Assembly (NCBI RefSeq): GCF_902652985.1
Contig: NC_047019.1
Location: forward strand, 1,426,001 to 1,490,000
Reading direction: 5' to 3'
From: Pecten maximus
Lineage: Eukaryota
Length of the DNA stretch: 64,000 nucleotides
Shown here: in pieces, positions 47,974-58,587 of the stretch
Layout: every line of letters starts with the position of its first letter
Position numbering within the stretch: the first letter of the stretch is position 1
Notes under the pieces: model-generated
Databases searched by the model: none
The model's input: the letters and a program-made list of their open reading frames with translations, nothing else
Told to the model about the DNA's origin: nothing
Made by a program: the position numbers and the translations under genes

Positions 47974-50900
47974 ATGGAAATCGGGATAAAAGAAAATGAC
48001 CATACCGACGACCCATCTGAGGAATATCCTCAGCGTCACAAACAAAAGACTGCCGCACAATACGAACAGAAACCCGAGGACGATGTACAAACACCGCCTT
48101 TACAAACAAAACAGACAGATGATCCAGGCACACAAAATCCACAATCTCCCAGAAAGGAACATCGACAAAACCCAAAGGCAGAGAATTCTAAAAGTGGTGG
48201 GAATAAGAAGAAGGGAAACGCACCAAAGAAGAAACCTGAACAAAAGCATACATACCATGGACTGTGTGATGTTATCTTCCACTACCTCTCCAGCACAGAG
48301 ACTGCAAGGAGGTTCCTCCACGGCAAACTCCCGTCCAACGTCACGGTCCTGAAACAGAATGAGGAGGAGGAAGGTGGGAATCAGTAAATCATGTCTGTTT
48401 ATTTTTTCGTGAAACGAATAAAAAAAATCTTTATCTTAACACTTTATCAAACATACAAGTCTGATTAATCAGAAAGATATGTAGTTACGCCTTAATATAA
48501 CAATATGTCATCGGTATGCTTCTATAAAAAAATCAATAACACGACTTCTTAACTATAGTACAGGTCGTACTAAGCGGAATGCACTGTATTAATGAGGTAT
48601 TTTTATCTTTTAGTTTTAGGTCAATGAAACATTATGGTGGCTTTTAATTGCTACATTTTCTCTTTGTATTTAATATCTTTTTTTCTCACTTTCTAGGGGA
48701 GAAATCTTTTGCTGATTGTAACCGAAGCCTACGGTCCACGCTGGACCTCCCTGTGGGCACCATTGTACAGGATATTGAAACATTGCTATTCCGAGCCTGG
48801 TTTTGTTACCAAGAAGAAGCCGAGATGTTGGCATGGATGGAGGTTCTGCCGGCAGAACGTCGGGCCTACAGCCTATCTAACAAGCTAGCTTCTATTAACA
48901 TGCTCGCAGGCACAGTGTCCGGGGGTGCTATGGTATCGCCAACTGTATTTGTCAACCATTGGTCGATCCCGCAAAATGTGCAAGTCACATTTGAACACGA
49001 TGAAGAAGTTTTGTCTATCACCAGAGTGCAGTTAACCACTAACCCTTCTGAAGAAGTCAAGGAGGTGATGGAAATACCATATAATACATTAACTGATACC
49101 GTGATAGCCCATTACAGCAACAATGCATGGTGCCTTTACATTGGATTGAAAAACCCACCAAAACTGCTGGAAAAATCTCAGACTCAGAGACGAAAATCTA
49201 CCTTTATCGAGGAGAAAAGGTTGGTTCGCCTGTCATCCGTCACAATTGAAGATATAGGCGATACGTCTGTATTATGTATAGAAGTTCCTGACGTTAAAAC
49301 ATCCGGGTCCTGTGCGAAGAAGGAATCAGGTGAACAAGATGGAATGTGGGCGGTTATAGCCAGACTAAAGCGGCACGGTTTCTCCATTTCCTATGCCAGC
49401 GTTTCAAATATAGCCTCAGAGGACCGCCAAGTAAGCGAAATTAAGTTCAACACATTTGATCTTGATTATGCATGGGAATGTCTTCTCTCTTGCGGATTTA
49501 AAGTCAGAGATGCTATAACTCAGCAGGCGATGGTGATGCTTGAGGAACAAAAATCTGCTCTGACTCCAGAAATTTTCCATGAAATGACAATTTCAGCTGA
49601 CATTAGTCAGTTTTTCGAATTCGAAAGAATTCTAGCGAAAAGCCTACAAAATGTCTACCGTCCGAATGTCATAGACGAAAGGGAGGAGCTACCGTCTCAT
49701 TTTTCTTTGACACGGCGTATCGTTGTTACTCCAACACGGATGATTCCACTTCGGAAAGAGCCAATTGTCCAAAATAGGATTATTCGCCAATATAATGACG
49801 ACTTCTTCATCCGTGTGATATTCAGAGATGAAGATTTTACACGATTGAGTGCTGCACGTTCGGAAGGATTGAAGAATATCACGGGACGGATACGAAAATT
49901 CATGGACGCTGGATTCAAAATTGGTGAAAGGAGATATGAGTTCTTAGCCTGTTCAAACAGCCAGCTACGTGAACACGGAGTGTGGTTCTTTTGTCCAAAC
50001 AACGGCGAGACTGCAGAAAGCATCAGAATCGCGGCTGGTGACCTCACAAAAGAGACTTGCATTGCCAAGTATGTGTCGCGCATGGGTTTGTGTTTCTCTG
50101 CGTCTAGAGCTACAGTTGAAGTCGACGTAGACCATGGTTCTGTGAAATTCACTGAGGACATAAAATCAGGACCTTTTTGCTTCACAGACGGCATAGGGAA
50201 GATATCAGTTCCCTTGGCGAAAAAGGTAAAACCAACACGAGAGACAATAGCCCGATATCAATCTTAGATTAGAGACAATAGCCCGATATCAATCTTAGAT
50301 TAGAGACAATAGCCCGATATCAATTTTAAATTAGAGACTATATCCGGATATCAATCTTGAATAAGAGACTATATCCGGATATCGATCTTGAATTAAAGAC
50401 AATAGCCGGATATCTACCTAAGTGTAACGCCAAATATCTTCATATCTTATATTTTATTCTACCTCCCCACAAACAATATCAAAATATTGGTTGATATTGA
50501 TATTCTACTTTATAGTATTCACTAAGATGGCCTTATAACCCTCTTTATGCATCTCCTGTCAGCGTACTTTAAAACACTTGCATTATGTTAAAAATAACTG
50601 ATATATTTTAACTGCAGTTATAAATCTCGATACCGACCGCGTTTGTAGCAAATAATACAGAAATAAAAAAAAATCAATAAAAAAAAAAAAAAAAAAATCT
50701 TTGTTTCCTAATTTTTAACAGTCTTAAAAAAATCTGAGAGATGATGATCACTTTGTGAAATTGTTCGTACTCCAGGACAATAAAACAACAATACAGTAAT
50801 GAGCATGTATCTCTGTTTTTAGGTTGCGGATTCATTACGGATGGATCCAGTTCCCTCCGCATTTCAGATCCGTTACGGTGGCTGTAAAGGTGTCGTCTCC

Positions 50901-53900
50901 AAGGATCCCACTCTTGGAAATTCAGAGCAAATCCACATCCGAGAAAGCATGCGCAAATTTGATTCTCCATCGAAAAATCTTGAAATATTACAGACAACTC
51001 ATCCAGGTAATTACAAAATGATTACTTAAAACGTTAAAATGACTTGTTAATTACCCTCGCAAAACAAAATAACAACAAACAAAAAAAAACAAAAAAAAAG
51101 AACACCTTTCTCTTGAACAGATAACATAGATAACATATCCATCAGAAACATTATCTATTTATGATGTGTTTGATTAAATCACCAGGTCAGCTATACCTAA
51201 ACAGACAAGTGATCACTCTAATGTCTGGCCTTGGAGTCCCAGATACAGTATTCCTATCACTGCAGGAGAAAATGCTCTTCAACATGGCTGACATGCTTAT
51301 TCGTAGCAGCAGAGCCCTGCGTGCACTAGCAGATGTAAGTTTGTGTTAAGCGTGTTCGGTTTTGTTTTATACAATTTATAATGACATAAAAACTAAAACA
51401 GCAATTTGGTTATTGTCATTGAATTATGCCATCATATATCTGTTTAACATGAGAACGGCTGATATTTCACTTGTATAGGAAAAATCAACTGATATAACAT
51501 ATAGATTTAGTATGTACTATATCAACCCCAAAAAATAACCAGTGAAAAGAGGGGTGCCCATTTAGGCCTTTCTACAGCAAATCAGTGATAGTGATAATAT
51601 TTTGAAAGAAGATCATTTCAAGATTTGAAGAATTAAGTTGAAAAAACAGTAGATAATGATAAAGTAGGTCAAGTTGACATTTTTTATGTGAAATACTTTA
51701 AGAAATTACTAAAATCTTCCATTAACAAACCCAATATATTGACAACGATTACGGTATCATGATGTCCTGGAGATAATCCATATTTGTCGAGTAACTGATC
51801 CGCAGAAAGCAATGTGACCTTGACCTACTTTATAATTTATTTACTGTTTTTATCAACTGAAATATTAAAAGATGCTAGTTATTTAACAGCTTACTGCAAT
51901 ATTTAGTTTGTAAGAACTTCAACAACATCAAAATGTTCATTTTACACCCTCCCACTTTGACCCCAATTTTTCTATGCGCCAACACAAAATCGGATGTTTT
52001 GAACATTATGCAAGATGCAGCTCATATCAAAGTATTTTCCTGCAAAATGTTAATTTTATCACTGAATTACCACAGAAAGGTCCAAATTGGCAGCCCTCCT
52101 TAGGTATCATTTCCTCATTATGCAGAATTTACTATAGTCAATGGTTCTCTTCAAAGATAAACGGAACATTCTACTTTCATTATTATATAAACCAGGATTA
52201 TAATTGACATTCAGAGTATAACAGTTTGTACTGGTGCTCAGTAGTGTCACTAACATAATATTTCATGTAATTAAATATCAGTTATATAAGTTTGTTCATC
52301 ACTAATTACAGGTCAATATAGGAATAAGATATAAGGACTTGATGAAGGCTGGGATATCTTTTACTGACGAAGCGTTCTTCAGATCAGTGCTGATGACAAT
52401 ATACAAACGCAAACTTGGTGAGTTGATCCGAAAAACCAGAATTGAAGTAGATTATGACCAGGGCAGAATCATGATGGGAGTTGTCGACGAGACAGGGATA
52501 CTGATGTATGGACAAGTCTTTATCTCATACACGAAGCATGACGGAATGAATTTCAAAGGTACTCAGATTCTTGAGACAGAAGTCGTCGTCGCTAAAAATC
52601 CCTGCTTTCATCCAGGTGATTTGCGTAAATTCCAGGCAGTTGATGTACCAGAACTCCATCATCTCGAAGACTGTATTGTTTTCCCTCAAAAAGGACAAAG
52701 ACCACACCCAAATGAGATGTCTGGCTCAGATTTAGATGGAGACATGTACTTTGTGTGTTGGGATAAGTCTATGCATCCTCCGGGAGAAAACAAAGAAGCC
52801 ATGGACTATGGAAATGCTATCCAGCAAAACATATACAGAACAGTGCAAGTGTCGGATGTGACAAACTTTATATCAGAATACATCAGAAACGATCAGCTAG
52901 GCGTTATCGCCAATGCACACGTTGTGCATGCAGACTTAAAAAATATATTTTGTCCAGAATGTATCACACTATCGAAGAAACATTCGGATGCCGTAGATTT
53001 TCCAAAGACCGGGGTTGTACCAGAAATGACTGCTGACTTGAGATGTGAAAAGTATCCAGATTTTATGATGAAATCTGACAAACCTCGATATACATCGAAT
53101 GGTGTATTGGGGAAATTGTACCGCCAATGTAGATCATTGGAGCAAGCCCACAACCGTACGTATGATTTGGACCTTCTCCAAAGCGCCACTGTTGTTGATA
53201 CGACCTTGCGGTATCCTGGATACGAAACATACTTAGACTCTGCACGTCTATCCTACGACATGTACAATGAAAAGATCTTACAATTGATGTCTCTATACGG
53301 AATAGAAACTGAAGCAGAAATTGTCACCGGTATCATACAGAAACTCAAGAAGAAGCGTGGTTACCTCCAGAATGAAAAATACGAAGTAGGGAAAATAATC
53401 CAGGGCAAGATGAGCGTTATCAGGCAAAAGGTGCGTAATGACTTCTTCGAGGAGTTCGGCGGGGAAGAGGAAGGAAAATCCCTTTCTTCAGGGAACAGGA
53501 ACAAATTCCTTGCAAAAACGTCGGCATGGTACGTTGTTGCCTATGACGTAAGGTTTCAGAGCGTCACGACAGGGAAGCGGTTTGTGAGTTTCCCGTGGAT
53601 AATGAGTGAGTTTCTGTCTGATATAAAGGCAACTGCAGGTCACTCTACTAGCGGAGAAACCATTAACATACCAACTGATCAAGAACGATTAATGCTGGTC
53701 CGAATAGGTTCTTCAGTAATTCGGCATTACGATATGAGATACGAAGAGCGAATGTACACATTTCAGCTTCTGAATGAATGTGTTGACTTGATTTCTCGTA
53801 ACCTCCATCGGCATTATGACACAACGATACGTTTGTCACTAACAGGAATGCAGTCTTTGTGTCTGATGGATATGTACTCTCGCGAAATTTGCATCTGTCT

Positions 53901-55953
53901 GCAATCGGAAAAGCGATTGAGCCCCCCTGATTTCAATAGACTGGTTGATAGTGTTATGCATGGTTGTTGGCCTGTAGCTCAAGGATCATTCTTGTTTCCA
54001 CTATATGAGGAAACAGTGACTGTCACTTTCACCCAAGATACCGTCAACGTGCAGAGAACGAATTTCATCAGGCAACAACTGCAGACACGTCCATGCTATA
54101 CACTCATCATGACATTTCTTCTCGACTGGGCGAGGAAGTATGGACTTATTGGAAGATCGAGAATGTCATCGTTTAACGAAGTTGTCTTTGCAATACTGGT
54201 TCTCCACCTCCTGTCAGATGGTGACAATAACTCCACAAAATCAATACGTGACGACGTTAGGCAAACAGATGGATCTCCTTGCTTTCCGGGAAAGATTACA
54301 TCGAACGACCAGGCTGACACAGCTAGGCTGCTGCTGGCCGTCTTAAGGACGTTCAACTCTTTACTGAAAAGAGATCAGAAAGGTGACATCCGAATACAAA
54401 CGGTAGATCCGACAGATAGGAACGGCAAACGTTTGCTAGTGCCCAAAAAACTGGAATGGAGGACATGCAAACATCTGATAGAGGAAATTCTCTTCGCTTA
54501 CCAAGAAATTGCAAAATCCCGATCGGTCAATGTCTTCTTTGAACACAAGATCATTGAAGAGAGTCACCTAATGATGAATCTGCCGTTGGAAATATGGGGA
54601 TCTGTGATGCACGCAGAAACTTACACTGCCAGGAGGCTGTCAGAAGAAACTGGTGCCGAAATCAGCATACGAAGGAAGTCATTTAGGGATACCCCAGGGC
54701 TTATACTTGAAGCGTGGGGAACAAGCGAGGCACTGTTCAATGTTCAACAATCCCTTCAAGATCTCAACGATAAATCCTCTAAGTTCATTACCACCTCAGC
54801 CCGTGACAAAGCCTTCATTGATGGCGCGTTCAAGCACTTATTTTACGGGGCAACAAGTTCTGAGCAGCAACTCACATTCACACGGTATTACGGCAAACGT
54901 CAACCGCATCACAAGGAACTCCCGTTATACGTTGCGTCCGTTGACTCACCCAACCAGGATACCAGTGTATGTCAAGACATGTTTAAAGAAGTATTCCGGA
55001 GACAGTTAGAGGTTATCCGACAGGATTTCGAGAACACCTACCACGGAGATCTTAGAATGGCACTAACATTTGGAATATACTACTTAATCTATGTAGATAA
55101 CCCACAGTTCACGATTTCAGAACTTGAAATGGAAATGGAAAGCCATGCCAACCGCGCGGAAAAAAAGTTAGAACTGAACTTGCCAGGACGTGGGAGATGG
55201 CGAAATCGCAAAAGGCACGGTCGTTTTACAAAACCTAAACCAAGACATATACGTGGATCGTTCATGCCTGTTGAATGTGACAAAAGCAATGTCGGTGCTT
55301 TCCTTGAAAACTCTTGTTTTAAAGAACGTCATGAAGAAGTGAAATATCACGCAACCTTTTCGATCGGCAATCAAGATTATGGGAAACGACACGAAGGTCT
55401 CGTAATCCTTGACAAAGATCTCGTATTCATTGAAATGCGGCTGTCAGACTTGAAGTGGATGGCTGTTGACGTCTGTCGTGGGTATGGGGGCAAGTCCAAT
55501 ACGAATAAACGCTTGGATGTCCGATGTAAACTTCAGTCAAGACGTGTCATGGATTTGGAGGGAGTGCAGGAAATGGCAGATACGAAAGTCCTCTTGGATC
55601 GTAACACACCTGTATTGGTGAAACCAAGCATTAATGCCCTGTATGTTTCTACGGAGTTTAGGGACAGAGTATCGTTCGTGAGAGAGAAGCATGTGAAATC
55701 GTACCGTTACGACGGCCCAGTGAATGAGTACAGCATATGGCGGGACATGAGTATTGAAATAGCACGTGTAGTTGAGTATTCAATACCAGATGCAAGTGGC
55801 AGATTTCAGGACATAGTGGAAAAACAGGAAGCCACTGTGTTACCTAAACTTCCTCAACTGGAAACAGCAGATGCTGAATGGGAGCAGTACGCACAAGACA
55901 TCTGGGAACTTATAGAATATTTAGGGAAACAGTTTGATTCAGACATGATGTAG
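47974..55953 (+). CDS. Cellular RNA-dependent RNA polymerase (RNAi-type, RDR/Rdp1/EGO-1 family), ~1967 aa, with a long C-terminal multidomain extension
   Basis: Phase-compatible coding exons 47974-48373, 48697-50225, 50823-51006, 51186-51334 and 52312-55953 (5904 nt). Family motifs: VTPTR, NRIIRQY..FIRVIFRDE, YEFLACSNSQLREHG.WFF, KYVSRMGLCFS, FTDGIGKIS, PSAFQIRYGGCKG, YLNRQVI, MMGVVDETG.L.YGQVFI, KNPCFHPGD, FPQKG.RPHPNEMSGSDLDGD.YFVCWD (catalytic, 52729-52743), HSDAVDFPKTG, YPDFM, FPW. Start codon less certain. Confidence 0.95.
50241..50412. repeat. 31-bp tandem repeat, ~5 copies (RdRP intron)
   Basis: Unit GAGACAATAGCCCGATATCAATCTTAGATTA. Confidence 0.9.
51547..52100. mobile_element. MITE-like element with imperfect ~44-bp inverted ends, containing an inner inverted-repeat pair (51637-51860)
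   Basis: AGAGGGGTGCCCATTTAGGCCTTTCTACAGCAAATCAGTGATA versus TATCACTGAATTACCACAGAAAGGTCCAAATTGGCAGCCCTCCT. Inner pair TAAAGTAGGTCAAG / CTTGACCTACTTTA. Confidence 0.55.
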
Positions 55954-56122: not shown

Positions 56123-56914
56123 AAATACAAGAAAGTACAGGGTTAAGATGTATCCCAGCATCGTGCCCCACTACCACTATGTTTATGCATATCCTGACTA
56201 GGTTGTCGACTTAGACTTGTGTGATTGTGTGTGGTAGTTAGTTAGGTCCATTTTTTCATCTCAGTTTCAAAAACAGGCTAAGTAATGTTACAGTACTTAC
56301 CATCCTTTATATTTCCATAAGAATACATGCCGTCATGGTTTTCATTTTCAAAGTCATCTATTCTAATGGCTTCCCTTTTGGCACATTGACTTTACATAAG
56401 TGTAGGAACATGACGTCTAGTGTGATAATACTTGTGTACAGTGTACATGTAGACAATCACTATGTATTCCATATTTCGTATTTTACAGTATTACTATTAC
56501 TTATAACGTATACAACTTAAGTATTGCGATTAGTTTTTCCATACACCAAAATATCCAATAGGTTTATCAACATAATATCTAAATTTAATTTCTGTATTTT
56601 CACATTTTGGTTTTGCGTCTAAATCATTTTTCACAAGTTGTGGAAACATTTTGGTATTTAAAATAGCAATAAATTTACTAAAATTATGTCAACAAACACA
56701 TATCTACGTATCAAACCAAGTAGATATTCATTTACGTAAACTGATATTGATCACAACAAGTACACGTCGATTTACTTGAACTGATATATCTCACCCTGTG
56801 AGTCTCCTGTATATCTTAATGTCCCCATCAGAGTAGATAACGCCCTCTCACACTGTGACCCTCCTGTATATCTTAATGTCCCCGTCAGAGAAGGTGATCC
56901 AACTGCTTTAGTCG

Positions 56915-57558
56915 TCCATACATGTTCGACCTGATGACAGGTATGTCTGCTCTGGATCTCCATACATGTTCGACCTGATGACAGGTATGGCTGCTTTGGT
57001 CCTCCATACATGTTCCGCCTGATGACAGATATGTCTGCTTTGGATCTCCATACATGTTAGACCTGATGACAGATATGTCTGCTTTGGATCTCCATACATG
57101 TTCGACCTGATGACAGGTATGTCTGCTTTGGTCCTCCATACATGTTCGACCTGATGACAGGTATGGCTGCTTTGGTCCTCCATACATGTTCCGCCTGATG
57201 ACAGATATGTCTGCTTTGAATCTCCATACATGTTAGACCTGATGACATATATGTCTGCTTTGGATCTCCATACATGTTCGCCATGATGACAGGTATGGCA
57301 GCTTTGGATCTCCATACATGTTCGACCTGATGACAGGTAGGGCTGCTTTGGATCTCCATACATGTTCGACCTGATGACAGGTATGGCTGCTTTGGTCCTC
57401 CATACATGTTCCGCCTGATGACAGATATGTCTGCTTTGGATCTCCATACATGTTAGACCTGATGACAGATATGTCTGCTTTGGATCTCCATACATGTTCG
57501 ACCTGATGACAGGTATGTCTGTTCTGGTCCTCCATACATGTTCGACCTGATGACAGGT
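56915..57558. repeat. 44-bp tandem repeat, ~14 copies
   Basis: Unit CCATACATGTTCGACCTGATGACAGGTATGTCTGCTTTGGATCT; it explains the overlapping repetitive minus-strand ORFs. Confidence 0.96.
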
Positions 57559-58587
57559 AATCAATACGTACACAAAGCATGGCCATTTGTATTGTTGTCC
57601 AGGATTATATACCTCTACACAATAGTGAAATACTTTATGTGATAAAAGTAACCGTGACCCAGACGAAAGTCCTTTACTCATTTTCGAAGAAAGGCCAATA
57701 AGTATAGTTATGACAGGTTCAAAATGCAGTCAAAGCTGCATATAGCGGTCAAGACAAATGTGTTTTTTCTGCAAAGGTTTGATAACTGTGAAACATTTTG
57801 CATAGAAACAGGTGACCTACGTAGATAGTTTTTATGTAGAGTTTGTGAGTTTGCTGTATAGAGGTGATATTTTTATAAAAGGTTTTTTTATGCCTGTGAT
57901 CTTTATAGATTAAATACATTTGGCATCTATACATTTTCTATGATCTTGCTGTTTTTGTTATATACAGGCGAGCGGGGTACAATATAAATTGAAGATTTTG
58001 GTGTTTACTTATACGTGTAGATTTATGACTATAATTGAACATAGTTGTTCAATATGTATTATTGCATTTAGTTTGTGATACATGCATTTTTATATTGTTT
58101 TTCAAATGTATATTTTTGTATATCTTATATTGACCAAATTTATTTGGTATAGAATCATAGAAATGTATTTTTTATAGTTTTTTTTTTTATTATTTTTAAG
58201 ACATTTTAAATGCATAAATACAAAGGAACCACACAATATTTATGGTTTACAATTATCATAATATCATCTTCACCATCATCATGACCAAGATACTTCATCA
58301 TCATCATACTCATCCTCATCATCATTAGTATCATCATTATCATCATCAATTAAACTAGGACGAGAAGTACATATAAAACCATAAATACTCTTATATATGT
58401 GTAAACATTCAGATCAACATACATACACCCTCACACACACATACATATTCAGTTTCCTGGTAGCCTGATCAATCCTGTCGAGGGCTCAGCTTCTGTGTTG
58501 GTCATTGTCATGTAACTTAACATTTGGGATGATAATCAGAAAAATCATGAATTATTTACTGAATATACAGCTTAATGTATGCTAAGA

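What the first reader, a model, noticed from the sequence alone, without database searches (positions are those of the whole stretch)
53746..54525. RNAi RdRP fused to an apparently inactive TUTase/non-canonical poly(A) polymerase-like domain
Seen: after the RdRP-terminal FPW motif (~53600) the same exon continues for ~780 aa. The segment LSLTGMQSLCLMDMYSREICICL ... VTVTF..DTVNVQRTNFIRQQL..RP.YTLIMTFLLDWARKYGLI....SSFNEVVFAILVLHLL ... ARLLLAVLRTF ... IQTVDPTDRN lines up by eye with the Trf4/Cid1/GLD-2 pattern (hFGS..tG...SDhD; NT.hh..y...P..r.L..hK.WA....i...hssy.h.hhhh.FL; LL..FF.yy; h.heDP...N). The GS and DxD catalytic residues are replaced. Established: RdRPs work with separate nucleotidyltransferases (S. 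pombe Rdp1-Cid12, Tetrahymena Rdr1-Rdn1/2, C. elegans RDE-3/MUT-2 pUG tailing). Inference: this is a Rosetta-stone fusion in which a pseudo-nucleotidyltransferase may recognise RNA 3' ends to select templates, i.e. a single-chain RdRP complex in a mollusc. I do not know whether this architecture has been described.
Basis: partly seen in the sequence, partly recalled or inferred. Interest (0 to 1): 0.88.

Follow-up and report, generated by a model that had tools for sequence, protein, structure and literature searches.

The report
Scallop RdRP fused to dead tailing enzyme
The king scallop's RNA-copying enzyme of the RNA-interference type continues, in one exon and one transcript, into a domain with the fold of an RNA-tailing enzyme whose catalytic residues are lost. 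Relatives in liverworts, amoebae and oomycetes carry the same fusion with the tailing site intact, so two RNAi activities known as separate proteins are here one chain.

Summary
The window is Pecten maximus LOC117326802, a 1967-aa protein from 5 exons. Its last exon (52312-55953) runs without a stop from the RdRP catalytic half, past the FPW motif (53590-53598), through 784 more residues. RNA contigs show the upstream GT..AG splices and cover this exon unspliced.

The flagged stretch (53746-54525) lies inside a two-lobed Pol-beta terminal nucleotidyltransferase fold (window 53692-54549). The AlphaFold model has pLDDT 87. VIA-align gives Z 20.4 to GLD-2, 20.2 to CutA and 19.5 to Cid1.

Pfam sees nothing in Pecten itself. 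A profile of the extension finds RdRP fusions whose aligned region passes Pfam thresholds for MTPAP-like_central or NTP_transf_2. Named examples are Marchantia, Riccia, Pelomyxa and Pythium, several with an N-terminal Dicer/RIG-I-like helicase. Many of them keep GS, DxD and the third Asp.

Pecten has G76-M77, E89-x-C91 and T136, plus D169 at a conserved Lys position, so it is very probably inactive. The palm is also the fastest-evolving domain and is deleted in paralogues.

A KH-like domain, a middle domain and a Cet1-like triphosphate-tunnel domain follow the NTase. I found no paper describing this fusion. The proposed 3'-end-binding role remains inference. The scan's other notes on this window (KH, CYTH) agree with what I found.

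The parts
47974..55953 (+). Whole RdRP gene (Pecten maximus LOC117326802). Exons are 47974-48375, 48696-50228, 50823-51008, 51182-51343 and 52312-55953.
   Evidence: tblastn of P0001 against the window gives five 96-100% identical blocks. RNA contigs carry GT..AG joints at 50223>50821, 51002>51182 and 51334>52312.
52339..53646 (+). RdRP catalytic C-terminal half plus head domain. The DLDGD active-site motif is at 52729-52743 and the terminal FPW at 53590-53598.
   Evidence: Pfam PF05183 scores E 2.9e-89 on ORF residues 1-264. The RDR2 alignment ends at P0001 residue 1199.
53692..54039 (+). Long N-terminal helix and palm (catalytic lobe) of the degenerate NTase. G76-M77 (53845-53850) replaces GS, E89-I-C91 (53884-53892) replaces DxD, and T136 (54025-54027) replaces the third Asp.
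   Evidence: The AF2 model mc85def586f0e has pLDDT 87. Fold matches are Z 19-20 to GLD-2, CutA, Cid1, URT1 and TUT7. Motif columns were read against intact relatives.
54040..54549 (+). Helical central (PAP-associated / OAS1 substrate-binding type) lobe of the NTase. It holds RTNFIRQQL and LLDWARKYGLI, with D169 (54124-54126) at the position where the liverwort relatives have Lys.
   Evidence: The same model and fold matches cover model residues 1-286.
54547..54798 (+). KH-like domain with beta-alpha-alpha-beta-beta-alpha topology and no GXXG loop. It is conserved across the whole family.
   Evidence: AF2 secondary structure is E292-296, H299-306, H309-320, E323-331, E334-342, H345-369. Relatives give weak PF24642 DUF7636 hits. 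Identity among pectinids is 81%.
54802..55224 (+). Conserved middle domain of unknown fold (extension residues 395-535).
   Evidence: The profile search hits this region in many relatives. AF2 confidence is low here.
55237..55944 (+). C-terminal beta-rich domain with a triphosphate-tunnel (Cet1/Pct1/RESC-like) fold.
   Evidence: VIA-align gives Z 9.9 to Cet1 (1d8h, 181 residues aligned), 8.9 to Pct1 and 9.7-10.2 to RESC-A chains. Alternating charged residues are conserved in 62 sequences.

Best explanation
Window 53692-54549, which contains the flagged 53746-54525, encodes both lobes of a Pol-beta-superfamily terminal ribonucleotidyltransferase of the Cid1/GLD-2/TUTase kind. It is fused directly after the head domain of a cellular RNAi-type RdRP and is made as one protein. 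It descends from an older eukaryotic fusion, (Dicer-like helicase)-RdRP-NTase-KH-middle-tunnel domain, in which the NTase was catalytically competent. In the bivalve lineage the NTase lost its metal-binding triad and is a pseudoenzyme. In P. maximus only a Glu remains at the first carboxylate position, and the GS serine and a conserved Lys in the central lobe (taken by analogy to bind the NTP triphosphate) are also gone. What is shown: the fold, the homology, the fusion, its transcription and the residue losses. What is inferred: the dead NTase is kept as a structural or RNA-binding part. Most likely it holds an RNA 3' end or a partner next to the polymerase, and it connects the polymerase to the well-conserved KH-like and triphosphate-tunnel-like domains, which would handle the RNA and its 5'-triphosphate end.
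For: Fold:
- The domain model has pLDDT 87.3 and pTM 0.80.
- VIA-align gives Z 20.4 to GLD-2 (266 aligned, 3.8 A), 20.2 to CutA, 19.5 to Cid1, 19.4 to URT1, TUT7 and TbTUT4, and 18.1 to Trf4.
- Foldseek finds 107 hits at E<=1e-3.
- The independent full-length model gives Z 12-12.8 to the same families.
- All listed ESM feature hits are PAP/MTPAP/NTP_transf_2 clusters.

Homology:
- The profile of the extension hits 142 cluster representatives.
- In relatives the aligned region passes Pfam gathering thresholds for PF22600 or PF01909: P0022 30.7 bits, P0033 30.4, P0088 45.7, P0092 50.2, P0100 51.8, P0122 42.3 and P0096 46.6.
- All of these that reach far enough upstream carry RdRP PF05183.
- Named members are Marchantia paleacea, Riccia sorocarpa, Pelomyxa schiedti, Pythium oligandrum, Caulerpa lentillifera, Ostrea edulis and Saccostrea cucullata.

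Residues:
- Intact relatives read FGS..SD[VI]D..[FC]DI[ST].
- Pecten reads TGM..EIC..VTF.

Transcription:
- Spliced RNA contigs exist, and one contig spans 52636-54192, from the RdRP into the palm. The next spans 54159-55935.

Decay of the palm:
- Pectinid identity is 41-43% in the palm, against 82% in the RdRP core, 81% in the KH-like domain and 75% in the tunnel domain.
- The palm is deleted in P0009, P0010 and the second copy in this genome.
- All 12 codon differences in a conspecific RNA contig over the palm are nonsynonymous, including C91Y.
Against: - Pfam and a PDB sequence search find nothing in the Pecten extension itself. The sequence link is therefore transitive, and the catalytic-residue mapping rests on alignment, not on a residue-level structural superposition.
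- A first MAFFT run placed the DxD one residue off. The register used here comes from the larger alignment and from pectinid orthologues that keep D-I-D or E-x-D.
- Some orthologues keep both strand-2 carboxylates (Mizuhopecten P0004 has DID), so residual activity in some species cannot be excluded.
- RNA support comes from assembled contigs, not single molecules.
- No experiment bears on RNA binding.
Confidence: 0.8

Rival explanations
1. The domain is still an active nucleotidyltransferase that uses an unusual set of ligands (Glu89 plus others) and tails RdRP templates or products.
For: Glu89 sits at the first carboxylate position, and several pectinid orthologues keep D-x-D or E-x-D. The overall fold, including the central lobe, is well preserved.
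Against: The third Asp is lost in every bivalve sequence, replaced by T, R or K. P. maximus also has Cys at the second Asp position, Met for the GS serine and Asp169 at a conserved Lys position. The palm evolves fastest and is deleted in paralogues. A conspecific allele changes Cys91 to Tyr.
Confidence: 0.07
2. The dead NTase is a protein-protein interaction or dimerisation module, like the DZF domains of NF45/NF90 or the Lin28-interacting N-terminal module of TUT4/7. It would recruit a partner or pair two RdRP chains rather than read RNA 3' ends.
For: NF90/NF45 (4at7_B, Z 18.7) and the TUT4 Lin28-interacting module (6iw6_B, Z 18.2) score nearly as high as the active enzymes. Rapid, nonsynonymous-rich change of the palm surface would fit an interface under conflict.
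Against: Nothing distinguishes this from RNA binding with the present data. No partner is known and no complex prediction was run.
Confidence: 0.3
3. The palm is a decaying relic with no function of its own. Only the central lobe, the KH-like domain and the tunnel domain matter, and the palm persists as a spacer.
For: The paralogues P0009 and P0010 and the second P. maximus copy lack the palm but keep everything from extension residue ~145 onward. The palm has the lowest conservation and 12 of 12 differences in it are nonsynonymous.
Against: The palm still folds with high predicted confidence (pLDDT >90 over most of it). It has stayed an open frame in scallops and oysters.
Confidence: 0.2
4. 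The fusion is an annotation or read-through artefact of two neighbouring genes.
For: None beyond the general risk of gene models. Some database entries are fragments (P0003, P0006).
Against: There is one uninterrupted ORF. An RNA contig bridges the junction. The same order of domains occurs in many species across several eukaryotic supergroups. Sequences that looked standalone begin with the RdRP-head FPWI motif and are truncated fusions.
Confidence: 0.02

Closest known systems
S. pombe RDRC (Rdp1 RdRP + Hrr1 helicase + Cid12 non-canonical poly(A) polymerase) - from my own knowledge
   Same: It combines an RdRP with a Cid1-family NTase and a helicase in RNAi. The relatives found here unite helicase, RdRP and NTase.
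   Different: In RDRC they are three separate polypeptides, while here they form one chain. Pecten lacks the helicase and its NTase is dead. The fused helicase of the relatives is Dicer/RIG-I-like. I did not compare it with Hrr1.
Tetrahymena RDRC (Rdr1 with the NTases Rdn1/Rdn2), and C. elegans RdRP modules (RRF-1/EGO-1 with DRH-3; RDE-3/MUT-2 pUG tailing) - from my own knowledge
   Same: They show functional coupling of an RdRP with a 3' tailing enzyme and a Dicer-related helicase.
   Different: The coupling there is non-covalent. In C. elegans the tailing enzyme marks templates in trans. Neither system is known to me to contain a triphosphate-tunnel domain.
Pseudo-nucleotidyltransferases: NF45/NF90 DZF domains, the N-terminal Lin28-interacting module of TUT4/TUT7, Utp22, MiD49/51
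   Same: They have the NTase fold with lost catalytic residues, reused for binding. VIA-align gives Z 18.7 (4at7_B), 18.2 (6iw6_B), 15.7 (4m5d_A) and 12.1 (4woy_A).
   Different: None is attached to an RdRP. Descent of the Pecten domain from any of them is not indicated: its nearest sequence relatives are the RdRP-fused NTases.
Dictyostelium RrpA-C and oomycete RDRs with an N-terminal Dicer-like helicase - from my own knowledge
   Same: They are helicase-RdRP fusions. Pelomyxa (Amoebozoa) and Pythium (oomycete) members of the present family have exactly this N-terminus.
   Different: The Dictyostelium papers that matched my search never use the word nucleotidyltransferase. I did not test the Dictyostelium proteins themselves.
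Active Cid1/GLD-2/CutA/URT1/TUT7 terminal nucleotidyltransferases
   Same: They share the two-lobed fold, Z 19-20 over about 260 residues. The NT..Y-like and W-A-[KR] helices are recognisable.
   Different: Pecten lacks the GS serine, two of the three carboxylates and a conserved Lys, and has no Pfam hit.

Membership tests
Pol-beta superfamily terminal ribonucleotidyltransferases (Cid1/GLD-2/Trf4/TUTase; Pfam PF22600/PF01909 + PAP-associated lobe) | Two-lobed fold: an alpha/beta palm with a mixed sheet, plus a helical central domain | tested here: met
   The AF2 model has pLDDT 87. VIA-align gives Z 20.4, 20.2 and 19.5 to GLD-2, CutA and Cid1 over model residues 1-286. All listed Foldseek top hits are in this superfamily.
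Pol-beta superfamily terminal ribonucleotidyltransferases | Sequence match to the family HMM above the curated threshold | tested here: not met
   Pfam finds no family in window:53620-55950 even at E<=1. Homology is transitive: the extension profile hits P0022 (E 2e-56) and P0033 (E 5e-38), and both pass PF22600 thresholds.
Pol-beta superfamily terminal ribonucleotidyltransferases | hG[GS] motif before strand 2 | tested here: not met
   Pecten has T-G76-M77. Relatives read FGS or YGS.
Pol-beta superfamily terminal ribonucleotidyltransferases | Catalytic carboxylate triad [DE]x[DE] ... [DE] | tested here: not met
   Pecten has E89-I-C91 and T136, where Marchantia, Riccia, Pelomyxa, P0100 and P0122 have D-x-D and D.
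Pol-beta superfamily terminal ribonucleotidyltransferases | Basic residue in the K-x-W-A-[KR] helix of the central lobe, assumed by analogy to contact the NTP triphosphate | tested here: not met
   Pecten has D169-W-A-R172, against K-W-A-R in the liverworts and R-W-A-R in P0100. The assignment of function to this Lys comes from my own knowledge of Cid1.
Pol-beta superfamily terminal ribonucleotidyltransferases | Untemplated nucleotide addition to RNA 3' ends | not testable with these tools
   This needs an in vitro tailing assay.
Cellular (RNAi-type) RdRP, Pfam PF05183 | RdRP domain with the DbDGD active-site loop | tested here: met
   PF05183 scores E 2.9e-89 on the last exon and 2.8e-44 on exon 2. 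DLDGD is at 52729-52743. RDR2 matches at E 7.5e-129.
RDRC-like assemblies (RdRP + NTase + helicase) | Presence of all three activities | tested here: not met
   Pecten has the RdRP and a dead NTase but no helicase domain. The relatives P0092, P0142, P0096 and P0125 have helicase, RdRP and NTase.
Triphosphate tunnel metalloenzymes (Cet1/CYTH) | Eight-stranded tunnel fold; ExExK and paired Glu/basic residues lining the tunnel | tested here: inconclusive
   Fold matches are Z 9.9 to Cet1, 8.9 to Pct1 and 9.7-10.2 to RESC-A chains, from a model of mean pLDDT 53 (70-85 over much of this domain). Conserved D633-R635-K637, R688-K690, E719 and E737 are present, but no ExExK was found. This domain was not modelled on its own.
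KH type I domain | beta-alpha-alpha-beta-beta-alpha topology with a GXXG loop | tested here: inconclusive
   The topology is present in the AF2 model but there is no GXXG. Relatives give only sub-threshold PF24642 hits.

The most novel reading that the evidence does not exclude
An undescribed, ancient single-chain RNAi amplification enzyme: (Dicer-like helicase)-RdRP-terminal nucleotidyltransferase-KH-triphosphate tunnel. It is present across Amoebozoa, stramenopiles, green plants and algae, and bivalves. This would mean that template unwinding, complementary-strand synthesis, 3' tailing and 5'-triphosphate handling were physically joined early in eukaryotes and only later split into the separate subunits known from yeast, ciliates and nematodes. 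In bivalves the dead, fast-evolving palm would have become a 3'-end clamp or a surface in conflict with viral antagonists.
Probability: 0.3. Interest if true: 0.8.

Novelty: new variant of a known kind. Interest (0 to 1): 0.62.

Why it matters
RdRPs and non-canonical poly(A)/poly(U) polymerases are known to cooperate in RNAi, but as separate proteins whose physical logic is still debated. A natural covalent fusion, found from liverworts and amoebae to oysters and scallops, is independent evolutionary evidence that the two activities act on the same RNA molecule. It also supplies ready-made constructs for structural work.

The series from intact to dead NTases within one family is a natural experiment on what the NTase contributes besides catalysis. 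The accompanying triphosphate-tunnel-like domain suggests that handling of the 5'-triphosphate of RdRP products is built in as well.

Bivalve RdRPs themselves are essentially unstudied. The 2024 survey of lophotrochozoan RNAi pathways does not analyse them.

Tried and rejected
- Direct Pfam scan and PDB sequence search of the 777-aa extension found nothing useful.
- The first profile job failed because full-length rows pushed the profile above 1200 positions. I rebuilt it from extension-only rows cut out by DNA reference.
- The first AF2 run, with 7 sequences, gave pLDDT 53. It was usable only as a lead. The second run, restricted to the domain with 26 sequences, gave pLDDT 87.
- The first L-INS-i alignment put the pectinid DxD one residue out of register. 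I rejected that register in favour of the one in A4, which agrees with orthologues that keep D-I-D or E-x-D.
- Hits of about 800 aa without an RdRP looked like standalone NTase-tunnel proteins. They begin with the RdRP-head FPWI motif and are truncated fusions.
- A word-index search with P0022, meant to name the intermediate clade, returned only P0022 itself. The taxa of most metagenomic and Logan members remain unknown.
- Nine literature searches and three papers searched for these terms found no description of an RdRP-NTase fusion.
- The review most likely to mention one (Burroughs, Ando and Aravind 2014, PMC4066877) is not held, so prior description cannot be excluded.
- I considered a cGAS/OAS/CD-NTase-like sensor reading. 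Those folds score lower (Z 12-17) than the TUTase/GLD-2 group (Z 18-20).
- No complex prediction was run, because no binding claim rests on one.


Full report
**Identity of the locus.** The window matches Pecten maximus protein LOC117326802 (P0001, 1967 aa) at 100% identity. tblastn places it in five blocks: 47974-48375, 48696-50228, 50823-51008, 51182-51343 and 52312-55950. The last exon lies in an uninterrupted ORF, 52339-55953, of 1204 aa. Pfam finds the cellular RdRP family PF05183 in exon 2 (E 2.8e-44) and in the first 264 residues of that ORF (E 2.9e-89), and nothing in the last 777 residues. The DLDGD active-site loop is at 52729-52743 and the FPW motif at 53590-53598. Arabidopsis RDR2 aligns up to P0001 residue 1199, and the extension numbering used below starts at residue 1191 (window 53620). 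A complete standard RdRP therefore ends there and 770-odd residues are extra.

**Transcription.** Contigs of run X1 carry three GT..AG joints that match the predicted introns, so they derive from spliced RNA. One X1 contig covers 52636-54192, from the RdRP part into the flagged domain. The next covers 54159-55935, up to the stop codon, and neither has a joint. Runs X5 and X6, which are on record as RNA-seq, cover parts of the same exon. These are assembled contigs and cannot prove a single molecule, but nothing suggests termination or splicing before the extension.

**Fold of the flagged segment.** All listed ESM-Atlas feature neighbours of the extension are poly(A)-polymerase/MTPAP/NTP_transf_2 clusters, at score 0.86, which is a lead only. 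A first AF2 model of all 777 residues was poor (pLDDT 53). Even so, every chain Foldseek listed for it was a nucleotidyltransferase (NTase)-fold protein, including TUT1, class I CCA-adding enzyme, PAP, TbTUT4, NF45/NF90, mtPAP and GLD-2. VIA-align against 48,161 representative chains gave Z 12-12.8 for residues 31-309 to GLD-2, TUT1, TUT7, TUT4, CutA, URT1, Tailor, Trf4 and Cid1.

I then modelled window 53692-54804 alone with a 26-sequence alignment and obtained pLDDT 87.3 and pTM 0.80. Foldseek gave 107 hits at E<=1e-3, and all those listed are in the same superfamily. VIA-align gave:
- Z 20.4 to GLD-2 (266 residues aligned, 3.8 A)
- Z 20.2 to CutA
- Z 19.5 to Cid1
- Z 19.4 to URT1, TUT7 and TbTUT4
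- Z 18.7 to NF90/NF45
- Z 18.1 to Trf4

The matches cover model residues 1-286, which means both the palm and the helical central lobe. The tool's stated background for unmatched models is a best Z of 7-8. The fold is established as far as prediction can establish it.

**Homology and distribution.** The extension is 42-67% identical in RdRP paralogues and orthologues of Mizuhopecten, Argopecten and Ylistrum and in unnamed sequences. A profile built only from extension sequences (A3) found 142 cluster representatives at E<=1e-3 among 1.84 billion proteins. Wherever a hit reaches far enough upstream, an RdRP precedes the module. The apparent exceptions of about 800 aa start with the RdRP-head FPWI motif and are truncated fusions.

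In many relatives the region aligned to the Pecten segment passes Pfam's own thresholds for MTPAP-like_central or NTP_transf_2:
- P0022: 30.7 and 24.4 bits
- P0033: 30.4 bits
- P0088: 45.7 bits
- P0092: 50.2 bits
- P0100: 51.8 bits
- P0122: 42.3 bits
- P0096: 46.6 bits
- P0125: 31.8 bits

The NTase of P0100 also hits the CutA structure by sequence (E 0.0035). Named members are Marchantia paleacea, Riccia sorocarpa, Pelomyxa schiedti, Pythium oligandrum, Caulerpa lentillifera, Ostrea edulis and Saccostrea cucullata. Several members (Riccia, Pelomyxa, P0096, P0102, P0125) also carry an N-terminal helicase. In Riccia its best matches are Dicer and RIG-I helicases (E 2e-51 to the ancestral Dicer helicase). 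The RdRP-NTase fusion is therefore neither a scallop peculiarity nor a gene-model accident.

**Catalytic residues.** In the 26-sequence alignment the liverworts read FGS..SDVDICV..FDIT. P0100, P0122, P0125, P0096 and Pelomyxa read [FY]GS..SD[IV]D..DI[ST], which is a complete NTase signature. P. maximus reads T-G76-M77, E89-I-C91 and T136 at the corresponding positions (53845-53850, 53884-53892 and 54025-54027).

Other scallops keep D-I-D (Mizuhopecten P0004) or E-x-D on strand 2. All bivalves, however, have lost the third Asp (T, R or K) and the GS serine. An intermediate metagenomic clade keeps FGS but has S/T-x-D and no third Asp. A further clade has SD-x-N. Degeneration has thus happened more than once in this family.

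In the central lobe, the liverwort K-W-A-R becomes D169-W-A-R172 in Pecten. By analogy with Cid1, from my own knowledge, that Lys contacts the NTP triphosphate. My first alignment had the pectinid DxD one residue out of register. The register used here is the one supported by the orthologues that still have DID or ExD.

**Signs of relaxed or altered constraint.** Between P. maximus and other scallops, identity per domain is:
- RdRP core: 82-86%
- KH-like domain: 80-86%
- C-terminal domain: 74-76%
- NTase central lobe: 58-62%
- NTase palm: 41-43%

The paralogues P0009 and P0010, and a second P. maximus copy 16 kb downstream of this gene (G000:C5:1497295-1499043, outside the window), lack the palm altogether. 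They keep everything from about extension residue 145 onward. In an RNA contig of run X6 (same species label), all 12 codon differences inside the palm are nonsynonymous, one of them C91Y. From 54868 to 55941 the count is 12 synonymous to 11 nonsynonymous. This is a single low-depth contig and could be a divergent allele, but it points the same way.

**The rest of the extension.** Model residues 286-369 (window 54547-54798) have beta-alpha-alpha-beta-beta-alpha topology without a GXXG loop. This segment is the best conserved part of the module, and relatives give only sub-threshold DUF7636 hits. The C-terminal 230 residues (55237-55944) matched yeast Cet1 RNA triphosphatase (Z 9.9, 181 aligned), S. 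pombe Pct1 (Z 8.9) and trypanosome RESC-A chains (Z 9.7-10.2) in the full-length model. Alternating charged residues are conserved across 62 sequences, but I saw no ExExK motif. These results agree with two other notes of the scan on this window, s1-788623 (KH) and s1-788563 (CYTH). I did not model these domains separately.

**Interpretation.**
- Shown: a cellular RdRP is covalently joined to a terminal-nucleotidyltransferase homologue, the join is transcribed, and the scallop NTase lacks most residues needed for catalysis.
- Inferred with good support: the fusion is old, its NTase was originally active, and bivalves inherited a version that became a pseudoenzyme.
- Inferred without test: the dead domain still binds something. 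The deletion of the palm in paralogues and its fast change favour weak or altered constraint on the palm. The conserved central lobe, KH-like domain and tunnel-like domain look functional.

**Comparison with known systems and novelty.** What follows rests on my own knowledge. S. pombe RDRC (Rdp1-Hrr1-Cid12), Tetrahymena Rdr1-Rdn1/2 and the C. elegans RdRP modules with DRH-3 and RDE-3 combine the same activities as separate proteins. Helicase-RdRP fusions are known in Dictyostelium. I found no paper that describes an RdRP-NTase fusion. The Dictyostelium RdRP papers that matched my search never use the word nucleotidyltransferase. The 2024 lophotrochozoan RNAi survey does not analyse RdRPs. The 2014 comparative review by Burroughs et al. 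could not be read. Precomputed Pfam labels in the protein database already show PF22600 next to PF05183 for P0022, so the co-occurrence is visible to anyone who looks. I rate it a new variant of a known kind.

Noticed in passing
window 55237-55944: The C-terminal domain of the RdRP extension matches the triphosphate-tunnel fold (Cet1 Z 9.9, Pct1 Z 8.9, RESC-A chains Z 9.7-10.2). It has conserved alternating D/R/K/E residues in 62 relatives, but I saw no ExExK. RdRP products start with 5'-triphosphate, so this domain could bind or trim that end.
   Followed up: partly
window 54547-54798: A KH-like beta-alpha-alpha-beta-beta-alpha domain without GXXG is the most conserved part of the extension. 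Identity among scallops is 81%, and it is recognisable in liverwort and Pelomyxa relatives.
   Followed up: partly
G000:C5:1497295-1499043 (L005), 16 kb downstream of this gene, outside the window: This is a second RdRP-extension copy in the same genome, 43% identical. It starts at extension residue 147, so it lacks the NTase palm, and it has one in-frame TGA. It resembles the Mizuhopecten paralogues P0009 and P0010.
   Followed up: partly
window 53773-54072 versus 54868-55941: In a conspecific RNA contig (run X6) all 12 codon differences in the NTase palm change the amino acid, including C91Y. The downstream domains show 12 synonymous to 11 nonsynonymous differences. This could mean relaxed or diversifying selection, or a divergent allele or paralogue.
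   Followed up: partly
relatives P0092 (Riccia), P0142 (Pelomyxa), P0096, P0102, P0125, P0143 (Pythium): These are giant proteins of 1850-2680 aa. Pfam shows a Dicer/RIG-I-like helicase and an RdRP in all those scanned, plus an NTase in P0092, P0142, P0096 and P0125 but none in P0102. P0143 was not scanned. They are single-chain counterparts of helicase-RdRP-NTase complexes.
   Followed up: partly
relatives P0044, P0048, P0055, P0057, P0060, P0063, P0068, P0085: These proteins of 330-390 aa, some on megabase contigs, contain only the middle and tunnel-like domains, with weak DUF7903 hits. They may be genuine standalone versions of the C-terminal half of the module.
   Followed up: no
window 56885-57681, minus strand: Overlapping ORFs encode a repeated peptide unit, the sign of a tandem repeat just downstream of the RdRP gene.
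   Followed up: no
window 47974-48375 and 48648-49400: Exon 1 encodes a low-complexity, basic N-terminus. Exon 2 gives a sub-threshold hit to the metazoan RdRP-associated PH-like domain PF25359 (26.1 bits against a cut-off of 27).
   Followed up: no
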